A stretch of DNA of 64,000 bases from Mytilus edulis (lineage: Eukaryota), in contig NC_092349.1 of assembly GCF_963676685.1 (NCBI RefSeq), positions 87,358,001 through 87,422,000 of the forward strand, written 5' to 3'. The notes beneath the pieces were generated by a model, which saw only the letters and a list, made by a program, of their open reading frames with translations, made no database searches and was not told where the DNA came from. The translations under genes and the position numbers were made by a program. Shown in pieces: positions 35,401 through 64,000 of this stretch; the stretch's first letter is position 1, and the number at the start of each line of letters is the position of its first letter.

Positions 35401-35968
35401 TTAATTATCTATGGCAGGAAATGTTCTGAGAACTCTTGCAATTCTACCTTTGCCTATGTTTGGGGAATTGGACAACGTACAAATACCTCTTGCCGTTCGC
35501 CCATTCAAGGGTAAAACATTCCCTGTGGTTGGACCTATGGATGCTACAGTACAGTTCAGTTATGTTGGAAACACTGCAATGATGTTCGTCACAGCAGCAG
35601 AAGCTTTACCTAATAATTCGTCGCTTGGAGGACATTTTTTCTTTGCCGCCGACGATACACCACCAGCCTCATATCCTGAAACAATGAAACCATTTTTTAA
35701 CCATTTTGGTACTAAGACCTCTAAATGGCATGTTCCATATTGGATTGCGATGTCTTTAATGTTTCTGTTTTTCTGTATACTATTTATTTTACGGTTCCTG
35801 AGAATAACTTTGCCGACAGTACATTTTTCGTTTGGTAGTTTAGCCTTTCTTAATACGACTTTCTATGTCACTTACGACAAAGCGAAAACTATGCTTGGAT
35901 ATAAACCTCTTTATGAATATGGGTCATGCATCGAAAGAGCCAAAGCGTTTTATGAAAGTATAATTTAA
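32419..35968 (+). CDS. 3beta-HSD-like extended SDR oxidoreductase, paralog 3; join(32419..32551,33305..33469,34457..34672,35418..35968), 354 aa
   Basis: MKHVVLVTGGSGFLGQHVVKHL, DIVLHVAS, YCSSS, YASSK (YxxxK), FGELD, YVGN, FFFAADDTP, MLGYKPLY. Exon sizes 133/165/216/551. The assembly gap lies in the last intron and no exon is missing relative to the paralogs. Confidence 0.93.
35115..35279. other. Assembly gap (165 N)
   Basis: Run of N in the last intron of HSD paralog 3. Confidence 0.99.
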
Positions 35969-43129: not shown

Positions 43130-43513
43130 AAACATGATATAAATCATATGTTCATCTTTTCATTTTACGTTTCACACTGAAATGAATAAAATATTGATGT
43201 ACAAGGTATATAGAACGATCGTGTTCCGGTAACATTGTGTTACAATCGATGACCAAGGTAACATCAATCGACATAGGTTACAAAAAACTAGTTCAACATG
43301 TTCAAACTTACAATCAAATTAACAGGTACAAATTAAACATGATAATAAAAAGATATAACTTATGTTTTAGCATGTTTCTCTTTTACGAATTGTTAAAATT
43401 TAATTTACTGCTTCCTGTGGTAAATCCGTATAAAAGATGTCCAGCTTCTGAGTTAAGCCACAACTTGTCTTGTCCTCCTTGTATACTATACCCTCTCACT
43501 GCTACAGTTAAAG
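43130..43513 (+). promoter_or_regulatory. Promoter, TATA box (TATAAAAG 43429-43436) and non-coding exon 1 of Gly/Met gene A (donor AAG|GTATGT after 43513)
   Basis: The block aligns by eye with 58200-58472 upstream of paralog B, including the TATA box, CTCACTGCTACA and the donor site. The coding exon has an acceptor (TTTCAG) 9 nt before the ATG, so an upstream exon is required. Confidence 0.78.
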
Positions 43514-45415: not shown

Positions 45416-46147
45416 ATAATGTTTTAAAATACGGATCAAAATATGTGTTTGATTCAATAATTTAACCGAAAACATCGAAACACCATGTAAACAGATTTGA
45501 AAATATCATTCAGTTAATGTTTTGTCTTTAATTGTTGCCACATTCCCGTATTACATACATTTCATTTTGTTATTATTTTATTCTGTAAATCTTTTTAAAA
45601 GAAGAATATTTCAATGGTAAAATATTCAGGTTTGAAGTATCTAAGTGATTATTATTCCCATTACGCTAACACATGTATAGGGACAATATGTTCAGCTATC
45701 ACTCCCATAGTCGCTATAAGAAAGAGAAAGAGTCAATATATATATATTTTTGGAATGACATAAAATAATAACATTAAATTAAGTAAATAGAATAAAGTAA
45801 ACATGCTACTATTTTTGTTTGACATTTACACTTAATTTTAAAGTTATAGATAATTTCAGTTTCCTTAATATAAATTCTTTTCATTATAAATGTCATCTAC
45901 TAAACAACAAATATATTTAAAAAAAAATATTTGCGTGACATATTTTGCCTTATAGGGGAGATTATAGGATTTATTTTAATATTGTTATAAAGATTATGTT
46001 TAAAAAAACTGTTTGCCAATTTATAAGGAGACATATCTAAAATATCATAATGGCTTTAAATGAAATACTTTTCGGAAACACAAAAAAGAATGCTCCTGAG
46101 TGATTGTTTTACTGACAAAATTCCCTTTTTTATTTCAGTCTTTCATT

Positions 46148-48229
46148 ATGAATCCAATTCAAACCGTTGTCACATTTATTGCTGTCTTCGTCACAGTTAA
46201 TGGTGCTGGTTATGGAAAAGGTGGCGGTATGGGCGGCGGTATGGGAGGAGGAATGGGAGGCGGTATGGGCGGTGGAATGATGGGCGGTATGGGTGGAGGA
46301 ATGATGGGTGGTGGTATGGGAGGTGGTATGATGGGTGGTGGCATGGGAGGCGGTATGGGTAAGATGATGGGCGGTGGAATGATGGGAGGTATGGGAGGTG
46401 GTATGAGTGGTGGTATGATGGGAGGTATGGGCGGTGGTATGATGGGTGGTATGGGTATGGGTAAGATGATGGGCGGTGGTATGGGCGGAGGAATGGGAGG
46501 TGGAATGGGAGGTGGTATGATGGGAGGTATGGGCGGTATGGGTGGAGGTATGGGTGGTATGGGTAAGATGATGATGCCAATGCCAATGCCAATGCCGATG
46601 CCAATGCCAATGCCAATGCCAATGCCAATGCCAATGCCAAAATCCATGCCAATGCCAATGCCAATGCCAATGCCAATGCCAATGCCAAAAATGGGAGGTG
46701 GTATGATGGGAGGCATGATGGGAGGTAAGTTGAACTAATATTGTTTTCTTACTTTTAACTATTTATTCTATTCAATGTTTTGCCTGATGAACGTGAGGGA
46801 TACACAATTACCGCTAACATAAAACAAACACCAAATACACGTGGGTATATTGATAACTCACAAATATGTCTAGCACGCTCTTGGTGTGACATTCAAAATT
46901 TCAACTGAATTCTATTAATGCTGCAAAAGTTAAGCTGAACTATTATGTCTATCTCCACTGGATAAAATGCTATCATATATAAAGAATAAGGTTGGGTTTC
47001 TATCATTTGTGAACATTTTTTACATGTGTATATATAGTACATGAATGTCATTTGAATTCAAATTCAAACATCGAAAGTTATACATTGATATATTTCATGT
47101 TTAAGAAAAAGAAATACACATATTACTATAATAACATCAAAAAACATCTTTATTATTAATATTATTTATTGACTTTTTTCATATAGGTATGGGCGGAGGA
47201 ATGATGGGCGGTATGGGCGGAGGAATAATGGGAGGTATGGGCGGAGGAATGGGAGGAGGAATGGGCGGAGGAATGGGCGGTGGAATGGGCGGAGGAATGG
47301 GCGGAGGAATGGGCGGAGGAATGGGCGGAGGAATGGGCGGTAAAATGGGAGGTGGCAAAAGTAAGTCTTTGTTTATTGCAGTTTTACTTTGTGAGAATGT
47401 TCTATATATTTGCTGACATTCATTTCATTTTAACTTTGACGAAGTTGTCTCATTGACAATCATACCACATCTCCTTTATATGTTGAATGTTTTGATAGTC
47501 TTTGAGTATTTTGACATTGATTTTAGTTTTGTATTTAAAATTTCTAATATTCAACTAAAAACCTACGTCTTACATTTATAAACATATTTCTTTAATTGCA
47601 GGATACAGAAGAGCCACTGGTACGTAAATTAAAGTACTGTGAAGTCATTAATGTTCGTTGGGTACCAATTTTCAGGGATTTTGTGGGTCGAGTGAACTAT
47701 GGATCTAACAGTTCAACGAACTACAAATTTTCTGTACTTTGGCAATCTGCGAAACTGAATATCTACGAAAATGCAAGTTTCCTTAATCCACGAAAATTGG
47801 TACCCACGAAAATAAAAAGAATCCACAGTAAAGCAAACGTTCTTTGTCGTGTAATAGTCAGTGCTACTCGAATACTTTGCATCTGAATAAGATTGATTGA
47901 GTGATTAAATGACTGAAGGGTTGGTTGATTGATTGATTGATTACTAAACTTGGCATCTCCACAAATGCGTTGTAGCAAATAGAGGACATTATATATCTTT
48001 TTAGCCTCTCATTTAAGACTCGAAATGTAGTCATTGTTATATTCTATTTAATCAATTACATTGTACATGAAAATTATTTTCAACTTTTATTTTCCTCGAT
48101 TAACTTTTATATCAAAAGTACATATCAAAGGATAAAAAACCTGATATACACCTTTCGTTATTTTTTTTATTGTCGTTTACTTATGTTGCCATTTTCTTTC
48201 TTTCAGATTCTTATTCATACGATTATTGA
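46148..48229 (+). CDS. Secreted Gly/Met/Pro-rich structural protein A (abductin-like, putative hinge-ligament precursor); join(46148..46724,47187..47360,47602..47619,48207..48229), 263 aa
   Basis: Signal-like MNPIQTVVTFIAVFVTVNG|AGYGKGG, then (MGGG)n, (MP)11-KS-(MP)7, more (MGGG)n and the tail GK-RYRRAT-DSYSYDY*. Splice sites are canonical phase 1, and both tiny exons are conserved in paralog B. AATAAA at 48282. The gene model is well supported; the function is inferred. Confidence 0.88.
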
Positions 48230-48281
48230 ACAACATCATTTAGATTGGATTAGTCAGAAACATTTCATCATTGTAATATAT

Positions 48282-48287
48282 AATAAA
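48282..48287 (+). terminator. Polyadenylation signal of gene A
   Basis: AATAAA about 53 nt after the stop, in the context TATAATAAATGTTT shared with gene B. Confidence 0.7.
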
Positions 48288-50880
48288 TGTTTATACATAC
48301 CTTGATTGTTTACTCATGATATTAATCACCAATATGAATTATTTTATATAAGATTTTTGATTGATGTAAAAATGATAACATGTCATTCTCTACAGTAAAA
48401 CACTTGCCTTTATCAGAAATTTAGACCCGTAGAGTATTGCCGCGAATTAAAACAAGTTTAACCCTGCTACATTCTGTATTTGCCTGTCCTAAGTCTGGAG
48501 CCTGTAATTCAGTAGTTTTCTTAATGCCTGTATAACATATTTGTTTTTTATGTTCTTTTTTTGTTCATAAATCAGGCCGTTAGTTTATTCGTTTGAATTA
48601 TTTTACAAGTGTCATTTTGGGCCTTTCAAACATGTAGCGTACTATGCCGTATGGGTTTTATTCATTGTTGAAGGCCTTACGGTGACCTATAATTGTTAGT
48701 TTCTGTGTCAGTTGGTATCTTGTGGAAAGTTGTCTCATGAAACATCCTTTTTGTTTTTGTAAGGATGCTTCAATGTTTAAAACATAATGATGGTCATTTA
48801 TTAGTAGGGCATAATAGTTATAAACACATAAATCAAAATAGAAAACGAACAGACTGTAAGAAATATCAGCTTCTAAATTGCTCAATCGTGATTAATGAAA
48901 GACGAATAACGAGTATGGCTGGATGTAATGTGTTTGTGAGTTCTCATTTCACCAACACAAGAGTGACACGACAACCATATTTTCTAACAAAGGAATATGT
49001 ATTTATAAAAAAAGATGAGTTGGAAAACGTCGATGAAATAAATTCCAAATAGCCCAAAGACGTCTTTTTGGTCAATTTACCATCTCCTACGATTGACAAA
49101 TGGCATTATCGTAAACCAAGCTTTCATTTTCCTTCAGTTTAGACAAACAAACAAATTAACCCATAGGACATCACATAATTAACATCGAAGAAATACACAC
49201 GCAACGAAAAACTGAAATGGAGTAACATGAACCATTATCACAATTTAGAGGAGCCATGTGTCAAATAAACGTAGACATTTCCTGTTTGATTCTTATGACA
49301 AGTCTTATTCGGTTATACATCACGACCAAAGAAAAGAGGAGGGCATGCATGTTTAACGACACATTGACCATTTCTATGGTCATCTGTAACATCGATATTC
49401 TGTAACTATCAACTACACAAGTCATGGTGTCAAATATAACACGTTCGATATCATGATTCATGTTTTCAATCAAGAACTTTTGGTGTAGTTACGTAAAAAA
49501 TCATCTTATTTAATATTTTGATTGAAACCACTAGCTTTTGTCTCTAAAAATTAGAAAAATTACCAAACTCCTGTGTAAATTCAAAAAGGAGAAGTACATA
49601 CAAACAGATAAAAACAAATGCTATAAATCAACGGAACGAGTGAAAATCAGCTGTTATATTCCAGGCTTATTACATGCACTTCCAGAACAAAGTGGTTGGG
49701 TTAATATAAAAATCAGAAATTATTGCAAATAAGACAAGTCTCCAAATACTAGATGACAAAGAAATTAACACAATAGGTCACTGTATGGCCATGGACAACG
49801 AACAAAGCCAATAGTGCATAGTCAGCTATAAAACATCCCGAAAAAAATGTAACACAATTCAAACGAGAAAATAATGGCATAATTTATTTGCAAAATAATG
49901 GACAAAAACATATATGTTACACACCAACAAACGACAACCCCTGAATAACTGGCTCCTGGTTTGGAGCGGAAACTTTCAAAACAAGGCGGGTTAATACATA
50001 GGACAGTGGTGTAACAGTACAACATAAGAACAAATCATAAAAAACAGTTGAAAAAGCTTTACCTGATCAGACAGATACCAAGAGAAAACACCCAACAAAA
50101 ACACAGCGTGGACGTAGACATGTATTTATACATTCCTTAAACAACAAGACACTAAGTACAGATCTTAAATTTTCTGACAACTAGTTGAAAGCCACTAACA
50201 ACTAATAAACAAAATCATGTATCTTAGACACAAATAACGTCAGTGCACATTTAGCATCCATTAGATTTAGTACCACGACGTCATGAACAATCAGAGAAAA
50301 ACATGACTTTGCGCAATGCCAAGATACAGGTGTCGACATATTGCAGAGCCATTAAAGTGCATATCGTTATAAACACAACTTATAATTTGATTTTAATTTA
50401 CTGATTAAATGTTGAATATTGATAGCAATACAAATCATATTCAAAGATTTTATTACCAAGACCATTACAGTATTGATTTGATAACCTTTTAGATAAGTGT
50501 ACTTAAAGGATCGTTACCGTAAAGTTTTTTAAATTGCTGGGCTAGGTAAACGGTATCAACGTAAAAGAAGGGATGTGATTTTCCGTTTAAATAAATTTAT
50601 CTACAGGTACAACATAATTTAAATCACAATCTTTTACATGTTTATAGCAATCGAAAAATTAAGTAAAGATTTTGAATAATATGTGATAACGAAGTCCCTG
50701 ACTTAATAATCCACTAGTAGTACATAGCTTACGTTAATTAAATCCTTAACGTCACAACAGACACAAACACAGCAAACGAGTATATAAATAGGGATCGAAA
50801 TTTTTTCTCTTTTTTCGAAACATTACAGTTTCCCGTGTATAACTGAAATATCTAAATGTAGGAAAGGACAATTACGTATT

Positions 50881-51038
50881 AGATAAAATACAAAGGTAAC
50901 AAAGAAACAGGCCGGTAACAACCGTTGCCGGATAATTTTTCTGCACGGGTAGTCAGGTTTTGACTTGACTACAAGTGCAGAAAAACTATTCGGCTGGTTG
51001 TTACCGGCCTGTTTCTGTTGTTACTTTTGTTTTTATCT
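50881..51038. repeat. Near-perfect 158-bp foldback palindrome
   Basis: AGATAAAA..AGAAACAGGCCGGTAACAACC..TTTTTCTGCAC..GTAGTCA / TGACTAC..GTGCAGAAAAA..GGTTGTTACCGGCCTGTTTCT..TTTTATCT. Confidence 0.85.
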
Positions 51039-54000
51039 GACTTGTACGATGTTTCAAGAAAGTAATAATACATTTTGCAAGACTAAACATTTGAGAAACT
51101 TAGTTAAGCCATAAAGCAGTAGTAGAAATGTAAGTTATTGTATAAACACTTTTTTTCATTTCCCTTCAACCGAGATTTTTATTCAAGAAAAAAAGTCATG
51201 AATCTAATAATTTGATAAAAAAGAACAATTTCAAGTAAAAGATGTCAGAATGTTGTACACATTTAAGACTTTTTAGAATGCAACTTCGTAAAAAAGTAAT
51301 ATATTAAAGAAATATGTTAGTGGTGAATAGGATGACGTTTGATTTTTATGGATGAAACGGAAGGAGGGGGGGGGGGGGCTAATTCATTTTAAAATAAACA
51401 GGCTGTGATCTTTACTTTTGATGAAAAAATGCAGGATGTGCCATTCCATCCCTCCATTCCCCCTTAAAAAAATCCTAAAAATCGCGCGTTTGTTGCCAAA
51501 TACATGAATTTAATATTCAGTGGTGGGGGTCCCGGGGTTGGAACAACCCTTTTTTGGACGATCAATGCATTTAAATTTTGGACATACAATTGGACCCCCC
51601 CTGTTTTGTCCTGGATTTGAACCTGGATCCACCACTGATATAAATTCGATAACAATATAAATGTATCAAAAGAATGAATTTCCGACTTCATTAGTGAATG
51701 AAATGTTTATGAAAATATAGATTTTGTCTTAATATTATATATATTCAGGCATATACTTTATTTTTTTTTGAATTCATGCTTGTCTCTAGATCTGCCAGTG
51801 TTGATCGGGATTAAACACGTGTTACATTATGATCCAATCGCAGCTTACCGCCCAAAATTTATGACATAAGTTGAATGATTTTCTTCTAGATTTGCTGCTT
51901 ATTTGGACGTGTATTACATGAACACTTTTTATAGGATCAATCGTGCATTGGTGAGTTGATAGGGATTTTATCTTTTGATAAGATTTTATTTTTATTTACT
52001 TATTTCCTGTCTTATTTTTTTTTTAAATATACACGTCAGTATCATCATTTCTTTACTTTCAGCATTGTCCAAAATACTATTCATGTCAATATATTGAAGA
52101 AAACATTTATTGACCGAATATTTTCTTCATAAAGGGGGTGGTATATTCTTTTTTGAGTATATTAACTATTTACTTTTCAACGCTATCACCCAAATGTTTT
52201 TGTTTAAATTAGCACTATTTACGGTATTCGGAAAATCAGGAATAAAGCAGAACATTAATTTGTCATCTACTTGACCATAATAATTTTCTTCTCATAAAAT
52301 TTGGGATCAAAATATCTATTTTAGGAGAAAACCATACCCCCCTTTTGAAGTTAAATGTCTAATCCCTTAGTGTACTGATATAAATAGTATTTTACTGGAA
52401 ATGTTTGGAAAAGATATTGATGCTAACGTAAATATTTTGTTCAATAAAAAGACAGGAAATAAGTCGGTGAACCAAACAGTTCAAATCTAATTGAAAGTTA
52501 AAGTGCCCATGAACTCACTGATCATGCACGAGTGATTCTATTCATAAAAAGAGTCCGTGTATCATCTAAAAAGAGTCCGTGTAACACCCGTTAATGTACT
52601 GTTTTTCTATAGCTCTACGGGGGCAAAGTCGTACAAAAACATATAATTATTATATAGTTGGTAAATATCGGCAAAAATAGTGCTCATAGGAATACCTAAA
52701 ACCTGATATTATAGCTAGCATAAATTTCACCATATATGACAGTTGATTATAGTTCTGTTCTATTGACACAATTAAATAAGCAACCGAATTAGACATGAAA
52801 ATGTAACGCTAATTGGAATAGTCCGTCACAATTGTATAAACATGCATCATAATTTACTAAAAAATGCAATTCACTTATACAATTAAATCTAACAAAGACT
52901 CAAACAATAAACACCACTCTTGTGTTTGAATGCGCAGGATCCATCTGAGCCAGGAACAACCAGATTAAAACCCCCACATTACTGATGCATGAATATCGAG
53001 TCCAAATAAAGCCAAGTATTCAAAAGTCAAGGGGGCATAGGTAATAGAGAAACAGTCTATGAACCAAAAAAAACAAAAAAACAAACAAACAACAACCCCA
53101 TAACAAACAGAAATATCCATATAACATCAGTTTGCTTTATGTAAGCATAATGGAAAAATTTCTGCACCTCAAATCAGACAACTTTTAACTCATGAAATTT
53201 CTTTCATCCAGCTTTAAATTTTATAAATGAGGTAACAAATGAAAGAAGAAAGATTAATATTTAAAATGGTGATAATTGTATTATGACATAGTTATTAAAT
53301 AACTAATTTGTGTAATTAGTTGCTATATTGTGACGTCCACACTTGAATGAAATTAGCTTCATTGATACATTATATCCAACATCCCAATATATTTTATATA
53401 TTCTTGCACAACACATTTTGACATCCAAAACCGTGTCAGATTTTTCCTATTATAATTCATTTTCTCAGTAAACCTTCAGTAAAGTTTGCAATCTCAATTC
53501 ATAAGTGATTACTTACTTTAATTGGGTATAAAATGTGTTCACTTGATGTTTTTTTGAAATCTGAGACACAGTTTTGAAGATAATTGGTCAAGAAAAAACA
53601 AGTGTGAAATCACGTCATATAGGGGTACCCATCTAGGAGCTGTATTCATTTTAAATTACTATTTTATTGACAAAAATGAATGTGTTACAACTGAAGTAAC
53701 AAAAACAGCTGATAATGAAATTTGATTTGTGATACCTTAGTTTCTTTATAAATTGAAAATTCATCAACAAACAATTGTATAAAGATGTTTTATTTTGTAA
53801 ATAATATCAGTACTAAAGTTCTGATTACTGCGCTTGATAGTCTACCAGCAGAAAAATCGACAGAGTGTTTTTAAAATGAAAACTACACGTGACAGATTTA
53901 ATGCTTTCAAATATGAACTAAAGTTGCAAATTATTCTACTTGATCACTAGTGGCCGGTTACCTCATTCGCAATCACACTACACCTTTTCATCTTACTCGA

Positions 54001-54519
54001 TCAAAAAACAACAAACCAGACACCAAAATTATCATTTGCATACACGAAAAAGTAAAATAACAAAAATACAGAACTCCGATGGAAATTCTAAAGGAGAGTT
54101 CCTAAGCAAATGACAAAATCAAAAACCAAAATACATCAAACGAATGAACAACAACTGTTATATTCCTGATGTGATACAGGTAATTGGTACTTGGTACTAA
54201 ATGTTAGAAAAATATGCAAAAAGAAAATCAAAAATATATTAAAACATAAATAACAGTCTTCACCTTTTTGCAATACGGAAACTGAACAGTAAATATCGGA
54301 TTATTGTGTATTAATCCTGGAATATAATAATGCATTGATTCCATATATAAACCGGTGCACTGATTCCGGAAAGTTGATGGTGTATAAAGTAAAATCACAA
54401 AAATACTGAACCCAGGGGAAAATCAATTCGGAAAGTCCATAATCACATGGCAAAATCAAATAACAAAACACATAAAAAACGAATGGACAAGAAATGTCAT
54501 ATTCCTTCTTCCAACATTG

Positions 54520-55206
54520 CATAAATTCCCTACATCTAATGGTGTATTAGTACGTTACATCCAGTGGTGTATTTAGTCTAATGGTGCATAAATTTCCTAC
54601 ACCCAACTGTGTATTTATCTAAATTCTGCATCAAAATATGTATTTATCCTTAACATGAAATGGTGTATAAATTCCAAACATGCAATGGTTTAAACGTTCC
54701 CTACATCCAATTTGTGTATTGTTACTCTTAATGCAAAGCTTGATTAGTACATAATATCCAATGGTGTATTAATTCCATACACACAATGGTGTATTAGTTC
54801 ACTGCATCCAAAATTGAAGTAAGGGCATACAACACAGTTTCGATACCTAGATGAATTATTTTGACAAAGTTGCATGATACATACCATCCAAAGGTGTATT
54901 AATGAACTACACTCTTACATCCAGTGATGTATTTATTCCATATGTTCAATAGTGTTTAAATTTCCCTGCATGAAATGGTGTATTTTATCCCCATTAGAAA
55001 AGTGCATAAATTCCAAACATAAAATGGTGTAAAAGTTCCCTACATCAAATGTGTGCATTATTACTCTAAATTCAAAACTGGATTAGTACATAATATCCAA
55101 TGGTGTATTAATTACCTACACACAATGGTGTATTAATTCCCTACACACAATGGTGTATTAGTTCATTGCATCCAAAATTAAAGTAAGGGCATACAACCCA
55201 GTTTCG
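54520..55206. repeat. Degenerate ~22-bp tandem array with a ~190-bp higher-order duplication
   Basis: Consensus near TTCCCTACATCCAATGGTGTATTAA. 54665-54842 is repeated at 55005-55206 (GATTAGTACATAATATCCAATGG...AAGTAAGGGCATACAAC). Confidence 0.75.
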
Positions 55207-56539
55207 GGTGCTGTATACGGTGCAGGAAATGCCTACCCTTCCGGAGCACCTGAGTTCACTCCCGGTTTTTAGTGGAGTTCGTGTTGTTTCTTATCTATTA
55301 TTTATAACTGTTGATGTAAATGTCTTTGTTTCCCCATTGGTTTTGATTGTTATTGTCTTTCGATACCACGATGAATTATTTTTGACGAAAACCTGCATAC
55401 AAGCTTTTTTTCACCTAATAAATTCAAATATGTAATAAAAAATAGTAGTATACCGCTGTTTGAAAGTCATAAAAGATTGAGAGAAAACAAAACCGGGTTA
55501 CACACTAAAACTGAGGTAAACACATCAACTATAAGAGGAAAACATTGAAACACTGAAGTGCAATAAAAACCAAAACGATAATGCAAAACACACAGAAACG
55601 AACTATAAGATAACAACTGCCATTTTCCGGACTAGGTACAGTACGTTTTAAGAAAAAAATAGTTTGTTGAACGTACGTTGAATTTGTCATGAACATTAGT
55701 ACAAATATCCTTCATACTCAAACAAAGCAAATGTCATTTTTAAAAAGAGGATTCATGAACTCGTTTTAAAGTTAAATCAGTTCGAATGAGAAAAATCAGT
55801 CGACAAATGCATCTGTTCCCGATATGTCACAATTTGGAGTCACACAAAATAAAATTTAACATTAGCAACATCTTTACCTCTCCTATAACTGTATCATATG
55901 CCTTACTACATAATCTCCAATAATGTATGTACTCCTTATGTTCAATGGTGAATAAATTCCCGATATCCAATAGTGACTTAATTCTAAAAATCCAATGATG
56001 TAATATATCCTGAGATCGATATGTTTGAAACACCTTTCTATGACATATACTCCCATTTGAATCATTTAAACATGATATGAATCATAAGATCATCTTTTTA
56101 TTTTTCTTTTCAAATTCTAATTAAGGAATATAATCATCTTGATTTACATTGTAGCTTGTAACAGTCGTGTTCCGGTAACATTGCATCAGACGTGTAACAA
56201 AAAAGGTATATACTAGACGCTAAGGTTGGCTAATTATACTTTTAATGTAGGGAATGTGTCAAAACATTTATCATCAATCTAAATCATATTCGTATTGTTG
56301 ACCGGCTATATATCTCAACTACTTTTTGCTTCGCTATTGCAATCTAAAACTCTTTCATCTCGCAATAGTACTTGAACCAATACAAACTAAAAGACAAACT
56401 GAAAGAATTGGTTCTGCTTTGTTTCATTCAAATAATGACCAACGAAGATACAAGTACGGAGGCATAAATACTACTTCGTAAATAATCACTCTGAATCAAA
56501 CAAAAAGTTCTCTGACATTACAAAGATACACGATTACTT

Positions 56540-56915
56540 GTTTGACAACATATTTTATACGTTTTGAGGACGTATTTTCCAACAAACAATCAGCATTCCC
56601 ATGATCACAAAATGTTCCCCTCTTCTTGCCGACTCTTTCATTTGAAGCTGATTTCATACATTAACTTCATCTGAGAGAGAGTCCGCAGTATCTTTATTTT
56701 GCAATATAAATTATGTTATCTAACTGAATAACTCTAAATTGGTGACTATCATGAACGCACCTATCACATGCAACATGAAATAAAAGGTACAACAGATATA
56801 GTTAAGTCTATTTCATATCATGATGTGCATCTAGAAATTGAAAATGAGTGTCTTTTGAAAACAAAACTTTACGACAAAACAGATGATTTCAGTTTCCCAA
56901 TTTTGAATGTTCCTT
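56540..56915 (+). pseudogene. Decayed Penelope-like reverse-transcriptase fragment
   Basis: Frameshifted DNIF..F.GRIFQQTISIPMITKCSPLLAD (cf. QQxxGIPMGTNCAPLLADL) and LKTKLYDKTDDFSFPILNVP. Confidence 0.75.
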
Positions 56916-58199
56916 TGGTATCTTTTGCCTCTCTTGAATCAAATTAACTTAGTGTTACATCGCTCTCCGATGTCTTCATATGCTTGTAATAACTTTAAAT
57001 GTTTAGCGCGTGTTTCATAACGACGAATGAGCATATACATTTTCATCACAATCGGAAATTTTTTTTTATTGATTCGTTTGTTTTTCTTCATTGCAAATTC
57101 TTTTCACCATAGTACAAGTATTGTCTCCCTTCTGGTATGACGTTAAATCATATGTAACAGTGAAGTAAAGCCATTATTATTAGAGTTTACGACTGCTCGG
57201 AAAATTTCGACGTTAATAGTAGTTGAGCTGACCTTTAGATAATGTTAGCAAGTCAAGAAACGTGTCAGTGATTGTCTTATGTGATAACTTTGTTTTGCTT
57301 ATTTGAATAAATTTTGGGCGATCGTACATTTTCTGTAGAATAAGGACAATGTTGCATTTGACATATTCTATAGTCACATTCGTATTAATAAACAACAATG
57401 ACCGAACATCGGTTAAACGAGTTAGCGTCAATGCAAATTTCAGAAATAAACCAAAAATACACATGATGTTGGTGATTCAAAACCACAAAATATTAGTATT
57501 CAGTATCGTACAAAGATAAAAGAATATGGTAACTTTTGAGCTTGAGAGACTAAGAACATATGTATTTTGTTTGAAACCGTATGTAGACAACGAAAGGACG
57601 TTTGATATTATTGTAATGATGACCTACTGTCTCATTAAAAAAAAAATCATATCTGTCTCCTTTTATTTGAAAATATTTCAAAATCATGAAAGTGTTTTGA
57701 AAAGAGTTTTAATTTGAAATATGCTAGGGTAAATGCATTTTACATTTAAAATTACGTAGGTGCCAGTATTCAACTTTTAAATATATTATATCTATAATAA
57801 AAGATATAGTAGTGTAAGGCATACAAAAACAATTATTAGGAAATAAATGAAACAGCCAATATCATCCTAATATTCATTTTGTTGAAATTGCAATACCTTA
57901 ACAGCTAAAAGTTTAAGTGTTATAAAAGGAACATATATAAGAACTTTATGAAACCGTAATGTTCACAAAAAATATATTATGAATTATTCGAATTTAATAA
58001 TTAATATCTATAAGGAAACTATTATAATTATGTTTCCAAAGAGTAATAAGAAAAAGAATCAGTCTGTTACAGTTGAAACCCAAAATTCAACTAACACACA
58101 CGTACATATAGTTCAAGTCTAAAAATCACTTTTGTATTTTGAAACGTTCCTAAATTAAACGTGTGATTTGTCAACCTCAGCATCGAGTGTACACTATTT

Positions 58200-58472
58200 C
58201 GTAACATATCAATTACAATCGATTACATACGTTACATCTATCGTACACTAGTTTGACATGCTAAAATGTATAATTAATCTAACAGGTTCAAATCAAACAT
58301 GATAATAAAGAGATATGACTAATGTTTTAGCATGTTTCTATTTTACAAGGCGTTAAAGTTGAACGCACTGTTTCCTGTAGTAAATTATTATAAAAGGTGT
58401 CCAGTCTCTGAATATGGCCACAATTTGATTGTCCTCCCTGATTACCATAGCATCTCACTGCTACAAGTAAAG
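58200..58472 (+). promoter_or_regulatory. Promoter, TATA box (TATAAAAG 58389-58396) and non-coding exon 1 of Gly/Met gene B (donor AAG|GTAGGT after 58472)
   Basis: Homologous to 43230-43513. Acceptor at 60048, 9 nt before the ATG. Confidence 0.78.
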
Positions 58473-60057
58473 GTAGGTTGTTTTAATAGAAATTTACTAT
58501 TTGGTGTTTTGACAATTTAACTAAGGTTTCGCCTCTATCAGGTAAGAAGGACCCTAGATTGGTTGGTTTATTATTTAAAAGGAATTGCTAAGCATATGAG
58601 GGTTCGTGATATTCATTTTTCATACCTAGCTTTCAAATATTTGACTTTGATTGAAAGTTAATTAAGAACAGGCTGCCAGTTAATTCAGTTGAAATTACTT
58701 AATATCTGATTTCATTAACTGCAATTTTAAACACAAACATCTTTTTTAGCTGCAAAAAAAAAAACCCGAACGATTTCGTCTTCAAATTATACTATGCATA
58801 AGTTTTGTACATGACATATTTAAAAACTGTATTTAGTTGTATCCTTTAACGAATCAACATTTATTTTTCGTTTTCCTGAACAGAAACATACATGGAAAAT
58901 ATAGAAATTTTATTCGATATATTTTTTTTTTTAAACTACCACATATTAAACTTCATTTTTAAAATCAATAACTGGGCATTTTTCCTGGTTTTTCCTGGTT
59001 TTTATCTGATTTTGTTATACATAGAATAAATTCAATATGCATCAAACTTTACTTCAACGTTTAGGTGATAGTTCCTATAACAAACTGTTGAATACATACA
59101 TTTTAAACCGAAAGGAAATAAGGCTGTACATAACTTGATTAATATCTTTAACACATTTACAATAATCATTGCATATTAAAAAATGCAAAATACCCTCGTG
59201 AATTTGTTGTTACTATTCTAATGTAGGTTTAAAAAATATCAATTAAAACCAAAACATTATCATTAATTGTCTTGTTTCTATTTTACATATATTGATAGAC
59301 ATTCATATATCGCTACAATAAAAATGAATGTTGAACGTTATAAATATAATTCGTCTGAAAACGTTATGTAGATAAACCAGGAGTGCTCAAACCAAACAAA
59401 GAAATATTAAAAAGCAAGGATGTTTAAGTATTTGAATACATAATAAGTATATCCCTTAATGTAGCTGAACTGTATTTTGTTATCTTTGATTGTTAAATAG
59501 CAGTCAAATATCAGAATAATTTATTGCATACATTTTGAGACATAAAGTAATGTGAAGATATATTCCATATTCCCAACAAAACTTTTTTTTCTTACATACT
59601 TGTGTTTTTTTTCATTAAAAATCTATGCACATTTTAGAAATTTTGAATGACTTGTAGCTTGAAATATAACATGGTTACCCATAGAGATTTTATTAATCAG
59701 AATTATACATAAAAACAAAATTGATTGGTCTTATCATTTATTTTTATTCTATAGATCACTAAAATATATTTCATGAATGTTCTTATTGCCTAAAACTATT
59801 TCAATAATAATAGATACAAGTAAAATGTTTTTTTGTACTTATGAGTTTAAATTCCCTTTTTTGTTTCTTTTGCCTCTTGCGCGAATATTAATCAGTGTTA
59901 ATAGATTACACATGTTACACGATGTCAGGAAAGCAAAACAATATCTTCTAATGAAATTATTTTCGATATTAGCAGAAAATAAACAAAAAACAAATGAATT
60001 ACAAATATTTGTTTCTTTTCCTAACAACCATTTCGTCTTTTATTTCAGTCTTTCATA

Positions 60058-63000
60058 ATGAATCCAATTCAGATCGTTGTCACATTTATGGCTGTCTTCG
60101 TCACAGTAAATGGTTTTCCCTACGGTGGCGGTATGGGCGGCGGTATGATGGGTGGTGGTATGATGGGTGGTGGTATGGGTATGGGTGGTATGGGTATGGG
60201 CAAAATGATGGGTGGTGGTATGGGCGGTGGAATGGGCGGTGGAATGGGAGGTGGAATGGGCGGTAGAAAAGGTATGCAGATGGAAATGGAAGCCGCTCCG
60301 GGTGGTATGGGCGGCGGTATGGGTGGAATGGGTATGGAGGTTGAAATGAAACCCACTCCAGCTGCTGGTAACAGAATGGGCGGTGGAATGGGAGGCGGTA
60401 TGGGAGGTGGTATGGGAGGCGGTATGGGAGGAATGGGCGGTGGAATGGGTATGGAGGTTGAAATGAAACCCGCTCCAGCTGCTGGTAACAAGATGGGCGG
60501 TGGAATGGGCGGCGGTATGGGAGGTGGTATGGGAGGCGGTATGGGAGGAATGGGCGGCGGAATGGGTATGGAGGTTGAAATGAAACCCACTCCAGCTGCT
60601 GGTAACAAGATGGGCGGTGGAATGGGAGGAGGTATGGGAGGAATGAGCGGCGGAATGGGTATGGAGGTTGAAATGAAACCCGCTCCAGCTGCTGGTAACA
60701 AGATGGGCGGTGGAATGGGAGGCGGTATGGGAGGAATGGGCGGTGGAATGGGCGGTATGGGTGGGATGATGGGCGGTGGAATGGGTGGTGGAAAAGGAAT
60801 GCAGGTTGAAATGGAAGCCGGCCCAGGTGGAATGGGAGGTGGTATGGGTGGAATGGGCGGTGGAATGGGTCAGATGATGATGATGCCGATGCCAATGCAA
60901 ATGGCAATGCCACAACAAATGCCAATGTCAATGATGGGAGGTAATTAGAATTGTTATTTAAAATTTAAATTACATTTTTCCATTCAATGTTTTGTTTGCT
61001 GTACGGTCGAGAAACTTCACCCTTTTGTATAATCCATTCATCGCACGCAGATAATACAATATATATGTTTAAGCATGATACCTCTTACAAAAATAATTCA
61101 CCTGTCATTTAAATATAGTCAATCAAAAACGATCATATACGAATTGAATAAAAAAAATCAATGTAAATCGTGTCGAAAGTTTGCGATTACATGTAATATA
61201 TTTCATGTCGTAAGTCTGACATTAAATGTAATATATTTAAAAACAAAATTAAATATATATTTCATGTTGAAGATAGGGAAAGTAAAAACTTAAGGTACCT
61301 ACATAAACAAAACCGATTTGTATTGTGTTCAACATTAATGTAAATCCTTTTTTTAATTTAATTTGGTGGATATTGACAATCATACCACATCTCCTTATTT
61401 TTATAATTTATGATTATGTAAAGTGTTAATGATACTTTTTATTTATTTTCATGTCATAAAGGTATGGGCGGTGGAATGGGCGGAGGTATGGGTAAGATGA
61501 TGATGCCTATGCCAATGCAAATGCCAATGTCAATGCCAGAACCCATGCCAATGCCAATGCCAAAAATGGAAATGGAAATGCCAATGCCAAAGATGGGAGG
61601 TGGAATGATGGGCGGTGGAATGGGCGGTGGTATGATGGGCGCCGGCATGAGCGGTGGTATGATGGGCGCTGGAATGGGCGCAGGAATGGGCGCTGGAATG
61701 GAAATGGAAGGCAGTATGGGTGGAATGGGAGGCGGTATGGGCGGTGGAATGGGAGGTGCTATGGGTGGAATGGGCGCAGCTATGGCTAAAATGATGATGA
61801 TGCCAGAACCTATGCCAATGCAAAAGCCAATGCCAAAAATGGAAATCGAAATGCCACCAGGAATGTCAAAAATGATGGGAGCTAAAATGATGGCTGCCAT
61901 GATGGGAGGTAAATAAAATTGATTTCATTTTCTTCTCCTACTTTTAAATTAATTGTTGTGCAAGCTGTATAGGAGAAAACACAAAATTCACCATTTCGTA
62001 TCATCCATTCATTGATGTGACATAATATGTTAAAAGTATAGACCTTTCACAAAAGATACAAAAACCGATTCATGCGGGTATATTGAAAACCTACAAATTA
62101 ATACGAATATAAATACGAAAAAGAGTTATAAAAAATAAAAGTCATGTTACTCTAATGTACATTTTATAATAATATCAATGACAATGTTTTTAACAAATAA
62201 ATGTATATATTTATAGTATAAGCTAAGATGAATTTCATATATTTTAAAGTTGTACATGCATAAAGGTAAGACACACATTATCATATTTATGAATGAAACG
62301 TTTAAATTGTACACAATATCTATTTACTTGTATTTATTATGTATAGTGTATATGATGTTCAATATATGTCTTGTTTCCATATAGGTATGAGCGGCGGAAT
62401 GGGCGGAGGAATGGGAGGAGGAATGGCCGGTGGAATGGGCGGAACAATGGGAGGAATGGGAGGAGGAATGGGAGGAATGGGAATGGGAGGAGCAATGGGA
62501 GGAATGGGAATGGGAGGAGCAATGGGAGGAATGGGAATGGGAGGCAAAAGTAAGTCATAGTTCATTCAAGATTTAATAAAGGAATAAATGCCTTTTTTTC
62601 AGAGTATAAAGGACTTTTATGATATGTTTATGAGTGACGTGGTTCGGTTAAAAAAACAATAATATCCTTTGTAAAGTCTTATGATCCTTTATTTTGTCTG
62701 TATATCTGTGTCACTGAATTGGCATGGCACCTTCATATATTTTTTTGGTTCAAATAAATGTTTTGTGTTTCTTGTTTAATTAAAAAATGAACGCGAAGTG
62801 AAAATAAATATGTGAAACGTCGAAACAGTGTGTTTTATTATAGTATTTATCTTGTTTACGTTGTTAAGGAAAATTAGTTCCATCAACGGCGTCTACAAAT
62901 TAATGACTTCCAGATCCTCTACAAAATACCCTTTCAATCAATCATATTGACGTATACTTTGATATGCATATCATATCAGAATAATGTTTTTAATAATGAA

Positions 63001-63626
63001 CTATTGAATTGCTTATATCAACATTATTTGAACTTTTTTGATGGTTACCTATTTGGCAATCATACAAAGTGTTTTTATAATTTTATATAGAATGTGTAAA
63101 TATTTATAATTCTTGTATCAACATAAAAGTCAATAAATTGATAAACATGTATTTTTTTAAATTGCAGGATATAGAAGATCTACTGGTATGTAGAACAGCA
63201 TTTATATTTATTTAGCAGACTATAATTATTTCTTAAAATGGCATTATTTTGTATCAGATGTATCAGATTCAAGTTTTATTATCCTCAGACACAAGCAGTA
63301 TATAAATGGTCAATATACATACATCAATACATAAATGAACAAATGATCTATACCTGTATACAGTACCTACAATATAATTATGAAAACACATTAGAGGTAT
63401 GACAATAGAAGCTAACACACTTTTAACAACCACGTGGTTATAGTAGTCAAAGATTGTTGAAAAATAAACAAGACAAGTATATTTTAGTCGTAGAGTTGAG
63501 TACTCCCGTAGTAAGCAAAAGTAAACATATACTAAAGTAGAAACAAAGTTGAAATTAATTTCCTTTTTGATGTTTACTCATGTGGACTTTTGTTTTCTTT
63601 CAGATTCTTATTCATATGATTACTGA
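60058..63626 (+). CDS. Secreted Gly/Met/Pro-rich structural protein B, paralog of A; join(60058..60940,61462..61908,62385..62549,63168..63185,63604..63626), 511 aa
   Basis: MNPIQIVVTFMAVFVTVNG|FPYGGG, (MGGG)n, four MEVEMKP(T/A)PAAGN modules, MP-rich blocks and the tail GK-RYRRST-DSYSYDY*. GT-AG phase-1 introns. AATAAA at 63679. Confidence 0.88.
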
Positions 63627-63678
63627 TCAACATCATAGACGTCGTATTAGTCCGAAACTAACCATTGTTGTACATTAT

Positions 63679-63684
63679 AATAAA
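63679..63684 (+). terminator. Polyadenylation signal of gene B
   Basis: AATAAA about 53 nt after the stop, same context as in gene A. Confidence 0.7.
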
Positions 63685-64000
63685 TGTTTTTACATGTTTC
63701 TAAATTGTTTTCTTATGACGTTCACCCCTTATATGAATTACTTATTAGTCGATACAACATCTTTATTCATTGGTGGAAACATTGTCATTGGTTATTACTA
63801 ACTGTTCAGCAAATGCATCAAATTTTATCATGACACGGTTGGTGAATAAGGAACTAGTAAAAAATTTGTCGACAATATTCTTGGTTTCTTCATTGTAATA
63901 AGTATTTGATAATTGTTCATGAGGACATTGTCTATATAAATAAAGAATTTAAAAGAGAAAAAAAACCAACAGCATGATTTGATCTATAGCAATAAAGTTA

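What the first reader, a model, noticed from the sequence alone, without database searches (positions are those of the whole stretch)
46148..63626. Tandem pair of abductin-like Gly/Met elastomer genes with a Met-Pro hard-block architecture
Seen: signal peptide, (MGGG)n blocks, no Cys, and Tyr only at the extreme termini (AGYGK / FPYGG and KRY...). Established or recalled: scallop abductin, the compressible hinge-ligament elastomer, is Gly/Met-rich, begins its mature chain with AGYGG, ends GGKGY and confines Tyr to the ends, where cross-linking is proposed. After cleavage at RYRR and trimming of basic residues these proteins would end GGKRY, which parallels that terminus. Unlike abductin they lack FGG repeats and instead carry MP and MEVEMKP blocks. 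Inference: a mytilid lineage of ligament elastomers with block-copolymer design, of biomaterials interest.
Basis: partly seen in the sequence, partly recalled or inferred. Interest (0 to 1): 0.8.

Follow-up and report, generated by a model that had tools for sequence, protein, structure and literature searches.

The report
Mussel Gly/Met-rich secreted proprotein gene cluster
A mussel-type genome carries four neighbouring, transcribed genes for secreted, rubber-like glycine/methionine proteins that end in a protease cleavage site and a small acidic tyrosine-rich peptide resembling a pearl-oyster hinge-ligament peptide. They are good but untested candidates for the material of the mussel's shell hinge.

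Summary
Two intact, spliced + strand genes lie at about 43.4-48.3 kb and 58.4-63.7 kb of the window. They encode secreted proteins of 263 and 511 aa. Gly is 47% and 40%, Met 30% and 29%, Pro about 7%, with no Cys. Tyr occurs only at residue 22 and in the last 12 residues.

Transcript contigs from four studies confirm every coding splice junction of gene 2, including an 18-nt micro-exon. The "pair" is really a four-gene cluster: two more genes lie just past the window, inside a 3beta-HSD gene array.

All four genes share one plan:
- a signal peptide followed by (A)GYG;
- Gly/Met repeats with Met-Pro blocks;
- a micro-exon encoding an optimal furin motif, R-Y-(R/K)-R;
- a last exon encoding a 9-10-residue acidic Tyr peptide ending YDY.

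That tail resembles pearl-oyster LICP (pQPDHEGTYDY), the aragonite-fibre peptide of the hinge ligament.

The proteins work like abductin by composition and design, but they are not abductin: there are no FGG decapeptides, Met and Pro are far higher, and no homology is detectable. No named relative turned up in 1.84 billion representative proteins or in the open literature.

Tissue of expression is unknown, so the ligament role stays an inference. Other notes of this scan flag the same cluster from the adjacent window, and a separate half-methionine, LMP-like family elsewhere in this genome.

The parts
43429..43513 (+). g1 promoter-proximal region: TATA-like box (43429-43436) and the inferred 5'UTR exon, which ends at 43513 with donor GT
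   Evidence: About 85% identical over 310 bp to the g2 upstream region, whose exon end is supported by transcripts. The g1 exon itself is inferred by homology only.
46139..46724 (+). g1 exon 2. The CDS starts at 46148. It encodes a 19-aa signal peptide, then AGYGK, (MGGG)n with GMGKMM every 34 residues, and (MP)n blocks at 46574-46688.
   Evidence: Open frame and splice sites. Tandem repeats of period 12, 102 and 6 nt. Mean hydropathy of signal-peptide residues 5-17 is 2.1.
47187..47360 (+). g1 exon 3: an (MGGG)n block ending GGK, phase 1-1
47602..47619 (+). g1 micro-exon of 18 nt encoding R-Y-R-R-A-T (furin-type site)
   Evidence: AG/GT borders and reading frame. The orthologous micro-exon of g2 is present in transcripts.
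48207..48287 (+). g1 last exon. It encodes D-S-Y-S-Y-D-Y plus the stop (48207-48229), then the 3'UTR with an AATAAA at 48282.
58389..58472 (+). g2 TATA-like box (58389-58396) and 5'UTR exon, which ends at 58472
   Evidence: The loose 5' ends of transcript contigs at 60047 match 58451-58470 exactly.
60049..60940 (+). g2 exon 2. The CDS starts at 60058. It encodes the signal peptide, FPYGG, MGGG blocks, four MEVEMKP(A/T)PAAGN(K/R) linkers (117-nt repeat, 96% alike) and an M/P/Q block.
   Evidence: Transcript contigs and joint 60940|61462.
61462..61908 (+). g2 exon 3: Met-Pro/Met-Glu-Lys blocks alternating with Gly/Ala/Met blocks, phase 1-1
   Evidence: Contigs span both joints.
62385..62549 (+). 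g2 exon 4: a Gly/Met block ending GGK
63168..63185 (+). g2 micro-exon of 18 nt encoding R-Y-R-R-S-T (furin-type site)
   Evidence: Sixteen of its letters lie between the two sides of joint 62550/63603 in contigs of 3 runs (table 5c).
63604..63684 (+). g2 last exon. It encodes D-S-Y-S-Y-D-Y plus the stop (63604-63626), then the 3'UTR with an AATAAA at 63679.

Best explanation
The genes encode secreted, intrinsically disordered Gly/Met-rich structural proproteins. They form a four-gene tandem family, most likely matrix precursors of the hinge ligament.

Shown here:
- The gene structure and the absence of Cys.
- Transcription and splicing of g2.
- Conservation of the N-terminal Tyr, the furin motif and the tail in all four paralogues.

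Inferred mechanism:
1. The signal peptide is removed after VNG (g1-g3; VNA in g4), leaving (A)GYG at the new N-terminus.
2. A furin-type convertase cuts after R-Y-(R/K)-R.
3. Carboxypeptidase trimming of the basic residues leaves a polymer ending ...GGKRY. The mature chain therefore has a Tyr at each end and Lys in regularly spaced GMGKMM motifs as cross-link sites.
4. The hydrated (MGGG)n chain acts as an entropic, abductin-type spring.
5. The (MP)n, MPGGMMGG and MEVEMKP blocks act as stiffer or associating segments.
6. The released 9-10-residue acidic Tyr peptide (ending YDY) binds aragonite. Like pearl-oyster LICP, it would restrict lateral growth of the ligament's aragonite nanofibres.
For: Gene models and expression:
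- Four intact genes share one architecture. All coding introns are phase 1 and all splice sites are GT-AG.
- Spliced g2 transcripts, including the micro-exon and tail exon, occur in contigs from 4 studies.

Constraint on the termini:
- MNPxQ in the signal peptide and the Tyr at residue 22/23 are invariant in the 4 paralogues and in foreign g4-type orthologues.
- R-Y-(R/K)-R is invariant in the four paralogues, including the P3 Tyr, which the furin consensus R-X-(K/R)-R leaves free.
- The DSYSYDY tail is identical in g1-g3 and differs only by 3 synonymous changes, while the 3'UTR diverges immediately after the stop.

Resemblance to LICP:
- The g4 tail NADYSQGYDY and LICP pQPDHEGTYDY are both 10 residues long. 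They share D3 and the C-terminal YDY (PMC13080008).
- In LICP the acidic residues and the two C-terminal Tyr are the residues needed for its conformational change on aragonite.

Fit with known ligament proteins:
- Ligament matrix proteins known elsewhere are Met-rich, low-complexity and poor in acidic residues (LMP; PMC7591529). Scallop abductin is Gly/Met-rich.

Coding constraint in populations:
- 9 of 9 indels in transcripts are in-frame.
- SNPs are 14 synonymous to 19 non-synonymous in a sequence where only about a fifth of changes would be synonymous.
Against: - No tissue information. The runs holding the transcript are coded, so expression in the mantle isthmus is untested.
- No proteomic evidence.
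- Cleavage at the furin site is predicted from sequence only.
- The LICP resemblance rests on a 9-10-residue peptide: 4 of 10 identities for g4, and YDY plus an Asp for g1-g3. The LICP precursor paper could not be read, so it is unknown whether LICP also comes from a Gly/Met-rich precursor.
- The N-terminal pyroglutamate of LICP cannot form here, because the N-terminal residue is A, S or N.
- Met-rich insoluble proteins also occur in nacre and prisms of Pinctada, so composition alone does not single out the ligament.
Confidence: 0.5

Rival explanations
1. The proteins are insoluble framework proteins of another shell compartment (nacre, prismatic layer, myostracum or periostracum), not of the ligament. 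The C-terminal Tyr-rich module would then serve quinone/dityrosine tanning or mineral binding there.
For: In Pinctada, Met-rich regions are common to insoluble proteins of nacre, prisms and ligament alike. Nacre NU-5 has DMGGMGPGP-type and EIK/PEIE blocks, which recall the MGGG and MEVEMKP blocks here. Tissue of expression is unknown.
Against: - The main chains of g1, g3 and g4 have almost no acidic residues. The Pinctada study singled out the absence of an acidic-rich region as the ligament trait.
- The tail resembles a ligament-specific peptide.
- The family was not mentioned in the parts of two Mytilus shell proteome papers I looked at. That is weak evidence, because those searches used EST databases and trypsin.
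Confidence: 0.25
2. The proteins belong to another secreted mussel material, such as the byssus or foot secretions, an egg coat or mucus.
For: Mussels make many low-complexity secreted block-copolymer proteins. Nothing here ties the transcripts to a tissue.
Against: From my own knowledge, not tested here: known byssal proteins are Tyr/DOPA-, His-, Lys- or collagen-rich, not 30% Met with Tyr only at the ends. No open paper holds the motifs of this family.
Confidence: 0.08
3. The genes are chiefly precursors of a small bioactive peptide, with a signalling or antimicrobial role. The C-terminal 9-10-mer released by a convertase would be the product, and the Gly/Met region only a spacer or propeptide.
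For: A signal peptide, a dibasic site and a conserved short C-terminal peptide form the classical layout of peptide precursors.
Against: - The 'spacer' is 100-480 residues of strongly biased, in-frame-maintained repeats with conserved Lys spacing and a conserved N-terminal Tyr.
- There is one peptide copy per precursor.
- The peptide is anionic and Tyr-rich, like mineral-binding peptides.
Confidence: 0.05
4. The feature is an artefact: microsatellite-like (GGN ATG)n DNA that merely happens to be open, with no functional product.
For: The region is made of 6-, 12- and 102-nt tandem repeats. Other genomic matches to the query were plain microsatellites, such as GWMD-type open frames.
Against: - Spliced transcripts in 4 studies, with precise GT-AG junctions and a micro-exon.
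- Four paralogues keep the signal peptide, frame, furin site and tail.
- Orthologues exist in other assemblies.
- All indels are in-frame.
Confidence: 0.02

Closest known systems
Abductin (Argopecten irradians; Cao, Wang & Bayley 1997, as described in PMC9999432 and PMC13052691)
   Same: - Secreted via a roughly 19-aa signal peptide.
- Gly/Met-rich and predicted to be disordered.
- Hydrophobic residues spaced by 2-3 Gly.
- Few Lys.
- Conserved Tyr right after the signal peptide and near the C-terminus, which are proposed cross-link sites.
- No ordered domain.
   Different: - Abductin is 136 aa and built of GGFGGMGGGX decapeptides. Here FGG occurs 0 times and the unit is MGGG / MMGG.
- Met is about 30% here against 14 Met in 116 residues (about 12%) in abductin. 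Pro is 7% against 1%, and Gly 40-50% against about 58%.
- Abductin has no MP, MPGGMMGG or MEVEMKP blocks, and the reviews read describe no furin site or acidic Tyr tail.
- No homology is detectable with HMMER.
LMP, ligament methionine-rich protein of Pinctada fucata (PMC7591529, Fig. S3)
   Same: - Secreted, extremely Met-rich and of low complexity.
- Pro- and Lys-containing Met blocks: MMMKPD in LMP, against (MP)n-K, PMPKM and MEVEMKP here.
- A framework protein with no acidic-rich domain.
   Different: - LMP has almost no Gly and is about half Met, with Asp in every repeat.
- It lacks the MGGG elastomer blocks, the furin site and the YDY tail. Its C-terminus is ...PTPYNLYQG.
- A separate LMP-like family is reported elsewhere in this genome by another note of the scan. 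I did not test that.
LICP, ligament intracrystalline peptide of Pinctada fucata (pQPDHEGTYDY; PMC13080008)
   Same: - A 9-10-residue peptide with a free C-terminus ending Tyr-Asp-Tyr.
- Acidic residues plus Tyr, the residues shown to matter for LICP's behaviour on aragonite.
- The g4 tail has the same length and shares D3, Y8, D9 and Y10.
   Different: - No N-terminal Gln, so no pyroglutamate.
- Ser/Thr-rich instead of His/Glu/Gly.
- Only 3-4 identities.
- Release by cleavage is predicted, not shown.
- The LICP precursor could not be compared, because the paper is not held.
Met-rich insoluble shell matrix proteins (NU-5 and others; PMC7591529)
   Same: Met/Gly/Pro repeat regions and alternating Glu/Lys-hydrophobic blocks in strongly cross-linked, insoluble matrices.
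   Different: Those are very large multi-domain proteins with Asp/Glu- or Gln-rich regions, found in nacre and prisms. The proteins here are small, and all but g2 are nearly free of acidic residues.

Membership tests
Abductin | Repeating decapeptide GGFGGMGGGX (Phe-containing Gly/Met repeats) | tested here: not met
   FGG count is 0 in g1 and g2. Phe occurs only in the signal peptide, plus F20 of g2. Motif definition from PMC9999432.
Abductin | Composition of about 58% Gly and about 1% Pro, with 14 Met in 116 residues (about 12%) | tested here: not met
   The mature chains have Gly 41-50%, Met 30-32% and Pro 6.5-7.4%.
Abductin | Signal peptide followed by a conserved Tyr, a further conserved Tyr near the C-terminus, and few Lys | tested here: met
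   Y22/23 is invariant in 4 paralogues and in foreign orthologues. A Tyr at P3 of the furin site is invariant.
Abductin | Detectable sequence homology to abductin | tested here: inconclusive
   phmmer of g2 exon 2 against 1.84 billion representatives gave no true hit. I could not confirm that abductin is in that library, and low-complexity correction hides such matches. No abductin sequence could be obtained for a direct alignment.
Abductin | Major protein of the inner hinge ligament (resilium) | not testable with these tools
   Run identities and tissues are coded. No ligament proteome of a mussel was found in the open library.
LMP (Pinctada ligament methionine-rich protein) | MMMKPD hexapeptide array, about half Met, Gly-poor | tested here: not met
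   Here Gly is 38-47% of the whole protein (41-50% of the mature g1 and g2 chains). The Met blocks are (MP)n, MPGGMMGG or MEVEMKP, and there is no MMMKPD. The LMP sequence was read.
LICP-type peptide | Short (10-residue) acidic peptide with C-terminal ...Y-D-Y-COOH | tested here: met
   After the furin motif the tails are ATDSYSYDY (g1, g3), STDSYSYDY (g2) and NADYSQGYDY (g4), each followed directly by a stop codon.
LICP-type peptide | N-terminal pyroglutamate | tested here: not met
   The residue after the predicted cut is Ala, Ser or Asn, not Gln or Glu.
LICP-type peptide | Occluded inside ligament aragonite fibres, where it restricts lateral crystal growth | not testable with these tools
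   This needs extraction from bleached ligament aragonite and crystallisation assays.
Furin/proprotein-convertase substrates | R-X-(K/R)-R motif in a secreted protein, in an accessible (disordered) context | tested here: met
   The sites are K-R-Y-R-R|A/S (g1, g2), K-R-Y-K-R|A (g3) and K-R-R-Y-R-R|N (g4), each on its own micro-exon. Actual cleavage was not tested.

The most novel reading that the evidence does not exclude
A single precursor delivers both components of the mussel hinge ligament: the Gly/Met rubber matrix and the small acidic Tyr peptide that shapes its aragonite nanofibres. If so, scallop abductin and pearl-oyster LMP and LICP would be lineage-specific remnants or offshoots of one ancestral pteriomorph 'ligament proprotein' family. 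That family would be defined by its termini and its phase-1 exon plan, not by its repeats.
Probability: 0.25. Interest if true: 0.8.

Novelty: new variant of a known kind. Interest (0 to 1): 0.6.

Why it matters
- Abductin is described as the only natural protein rubber known to work in compression, and only the scallop sequence is widely used as a template. A second, much more Met-rich design with built-in Met-Pro and Glu/Lys blocks, regular Lys spacing and Tyr-capped ends would give materials scientists a natural block-copolymer series: four paralogues of 124-511 aa.
- The furin-released YDY peptide would link matrix secretion to control of aragonite nanofibre growth in a second bivalve order. 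That makes the LICP mechanism testable by comparison.
- The conserved termini and the micro-exon give a homology handle for ligament proteins whose repeats evolve too fast for sequence searches.

Tried and rejected
- **Pfam** on three exon translations: no family.
- **Word-index protein search.** With g1 exon 2, whole and then residues 1-45, it returned only composition-driven bacterial hits. With g4 exon 1 it found unnamed g4-type orthologues on metagenome contigs.
- **Reaching those orthologue contigs.** The one metagenome scan returned an unrelated (GQMP)n locus. So conservation of the tail in another species could not be checked.
- **Exhaustive HMMER search** with g2 exon 2: one spurious bacterial repeat protein.
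- **Own-genome protein searches.** Apart from the cluster, the matches I inspected were microsatellite open frames (GWMD, CMYV) and a Gly/Ser/Leu protein. I rejected them as relatives.
- **Papers.** The LICP cDNA paper and a review by the same group are not held. Abductin together with Mytilus occurs only in two papers that print no mussel sequence. No open paper prints the family's motifs. The parts of two Mytilus shell-proteome papers I looked at mention nothing similar.
- **Joined model.** The joined spliced protein was never sent to a search tool. All searches were exon by exon, and joining was done only inside local scripts, to check frame and composition.
- **Other limits.** The N run at 35115-35279 was left alone.

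Full report
**1. Observation**

The + strand between 46.1 and 63.7 kb holds long open frames made almost only of Gly and Met. GC is higher there, and GC skew is +0.34 to +0.41 against a background of about 32% GC. Reading the DNA and joining exons in a local script gives two intact genes with canonical GT-AG introns.
- g1 has exons 46148-46724, 47187-47360, 47602-47619 and 48207-48229, and encodes 263 aa.
- g2 has exons 60058-60940, 61462-61908, 62385-62549, 63168-63185 and 63604-63626, and encodes 511 aa.

All coding introns are phase 1.

- Gly is 46.8% in g1 and 39.9% in g2. Met is 30.0% and 28.8%. Pro is 7.2% and 6.5%.
- There is no Cys.
- Tyr sits at residue 22 and at four positions in the last 12 residues.
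- MGGG occurs 29 and 37 times, MP 18 and 17 times, MEVEMKP 4 times (g2 only), FGG never.

The repeats are tandem at the DNA level, with periods of 6, 12, 102 and 117 nt. In g1, Lys recurs every 34 residues in a GMGKMM context.

**2. The genes are transcribed and spliced as modelled**

Fourteen small transcriptome-like runs of one organism held about a fifth to a quarter of the words of the g2 stretch. Contigs of four of them, from four studies, were laid on 59950-63750.
- They cover the exons and leave the introns at zero depth.
- They carry the joints 60940|61462 and 61908|62385.
- They carry a joint 62550/63603 with 16 letters of the 18-nt micro-exon between its two sides.
- Their 5' ends run on into letters that match 58451-58470 exactly.

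So there is a 5'UTR exon ending at 58472, spliced to 60049. The region upstream of it is about 85% identical to the matching region of g1 and includes a TATA-like box (43429 in g1, 58389 in g2). AATAAA signals lie 53 nt past each stop codon.

Variation among the transcripts also points to coding constraint. All nine indels are multiples of three. SNPs are 14 synonymous to 19 non-synonymous. That is more synonymous than neutral change would give in a Gly/Met sequence, by my rough estimate. Run identities and tissues are coded, so this evidence shows expression but not where.

**3. Surroundings: a four-gene family**

Two more genes follow just beyond the window's end.
- g3 starts 7.95 kb past the end and encodes 195 aa.
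- g4 starts 17.9 kb past the end and encodes 124 aa, with MPGGMMGG octapeptide repeats.

A degenerate pattern for the signal-peptide exon hits exactly these four places in the 1.37-Gb genome. The tail-exon pattern hits g1-g3 only, because g4's tail has diverged.

The cluster sits inside an array of 3beta-hydroxysteroid-dehydrogenase-family genes (PF01073). These lie upstream in the window, and another copy lies downstream of g4. Other genomic matches to the Gly/Met query were microsatellite open frames and are not relatives.

**4. The shared plan**

All four genes share these elements:
- MNPxQ... signal peptides whose residues 5-17 have a mean hydropathy of 2.1-2.35.
- A Tyr at residue 22 or 23, invariant also in foreign orthologues.
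- Gly/Met repeats whose number and kind differ freely between paralogues.
- A last repeat exon ending in GGK (GGKR in g4).
- An 18-nt micro-exon encoding R-Y-R-R (g1, g2, g4) or R-Y-K-R (g3).
- A final exon encoding DSYSYDY (g1-g3) or DYSQGYDY (g4), followed by the stop codon.

R-X-(K/R)-R is the optimal furin/proprotein-convertase motif (established knowledge). Here P1, P2, P4 and P5 are all basic. The P3 Tyr, which the protease consensus leaves free, is invariant. The DSYSYDY codons of g1-g3 differ only by three synonymous changes, while the 3'UTR diverges right after the stop. So selection holds the two ends of the protein, and the middle evolves by repeat turnover.

**5. Comparison with what is known**

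Sequence searches gave no named relative.
- Pfam finds nothing.
- An exhaustive phmmer search of 1.84 billion representatives with g2 exon 2 returned one spurious bacterial protein.
- The word-index search found only unnamed g4-type orthologues on metagenome contigs. They are about 68% identical, and different contigs carry 3 to 9 MPGGMMGG repeats. These show that the family exists in at least one other organism and that repeat number varies. Their downstream exons could not be reached.

Abductin, as described in two reviews:
- It is 136 aa with a 19-aa signal peptide.
- It has a conserved Tyr at position 20 and another conserved Tyr; Tyr residues lie at the extremities of the sequence.
- It is built of GGFGGMGGGX repeats.
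- It has about 58% Gly, 1% Pro and 14 Met in 116 residues.

The mussel proteins share the design: secreted, disordered, hydrophobes spaced by Gly2-3, terminal Tyr, few Lys. They fail the defining repeat and the composition. They work like abductin but are not members of that family.

Pinctada LMP (the sequence was read) is an MMMKPD array with hardly any Gly. The MP-K and MEVEMKP blocks here recall it, but again membership fails.

The most specific link is to LICP, the 10-residue peptide pQPDHEGTYDY occluded in Pinctada ligament aragonite nanofibres.
- The predicted cleavage products here are 9-10 residues long, acidic, Tyr-rich, and end in the same YDY-COOH.
- The g4 peptide matches LICP in length and at D3, Y8, D9 and Y10.
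- In LICP the acidic residues and the two C-terminal Tyr are the residues needed for its conformational change on aragonite.
- LICP is proposed to block lateral (a/b-axis) growth, so that fibres form.

I recall, but could not verify, that LICP is itself cut from a precursor at a dibasic site. The paper is not held.

**6. Most likely mechanism**

Shown here: gene structure for all four genes, expression and splicing of g2, and conservation of the termini.

Inferred:
- Secretion and signal-peptide cleavage.
- Furin-type cleavage, then trimming to give a polymer capped by Tyr at both ends.
- Cross-linking through Tyr and through the regularly spaced Lys. Met-Lys sulfilimine links have been speculated for abductin.
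- Entropic elasticity of the hydrated Gly/Met chain.
- Stiffer, PPII-prone or associating Met-Pro and Glu/Lys blocks. GGM repeat tails of chaperonins are reported to adopt PPII helices (title and abstract of PMC12571646, seen; paper not read).
- An aragonite-binding role for the released peptide.

Ligament localisation is the weakest step. It rests on composition, on the lack of acidic domains, and on the LICP-like tail. The lack of acidic domains is the trait that distinguished ligament from nacre and prism proteins in Pinctada. I put the full reading at about 0.5. The main rival, a Met-rich framework protein of another shell layer, gets about 0.25.

**7. Novelty**

Within the open library no paper prints the family's motifs, and none links abductin-type proteins to Mytilus beyond reviews. 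The genes are probably present in public annotations as uncharacterised proteins, which I could not check.

As a kind of molecule this is a new variant of known ligament and Met-rich matrix proteins. The new points are:
- the combination of an abductin-like spring with Met-Pro blocks;
- a dedicated furin micro-exon;
- a LICP-like tail;
- the four-member size series.

**8. Limits**

- Searches were made exon by exon. The joined model was not sent to any search tool.
- The species was not determined by me.

Noticed in passing
window 61372-61405 (g2 intron) and 47455-47476 (g1 intron): A short shared element (core GACAATCATACCACATCTCCTT) lies in introns of both genes. In the transcript assemblies this roughly 33-nt piece has very high summed depth (up to about 1,278). 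Many contigs run on into unrelated sequence on both sides. It is therefore part of a dispersed repeat that is transcribed in many places.
   Followed up: partly
window 12662-13237 (-), 27380-28937 (+), 35411-35968 (+); L005 1474-2019 and 4071-4340 (-): Several 3beta-HSD/NAD-epimerase family gene copies (PF01073) flank the Gly/Met cluster on both sides. They could serve as a synteny anchor for comparison with other bivalves.
   Followed up: partly
window 16380-18421: A 74-bp minisatellite of 27 copies, 93% alike, with strong negative GC skew. It gives spurious long open frames.
   Followed up: partly
window 14428-14517: Another note of the scan reports a hammerhead ribozyme here. An Rfam scan of the whole window at gathering thresholds returned no family at all, so I could not confirm it at that stringency.
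   Followed up: partly
P0004-P0007 and P0026-P0033 (metagenome contigs of about 0.5-3.4 kb): The g4-type orthologue occurs with 3 to 9 MPGGMMGG repeats on different contigs. This indicates repeat-number polymorphism, as do the in-frame indels seen in g2 transcripts.
   Followed up: partly
window 35115-35279: A run of N (assembly gap or masked stretch). It was left untouched.
   Followed up: no
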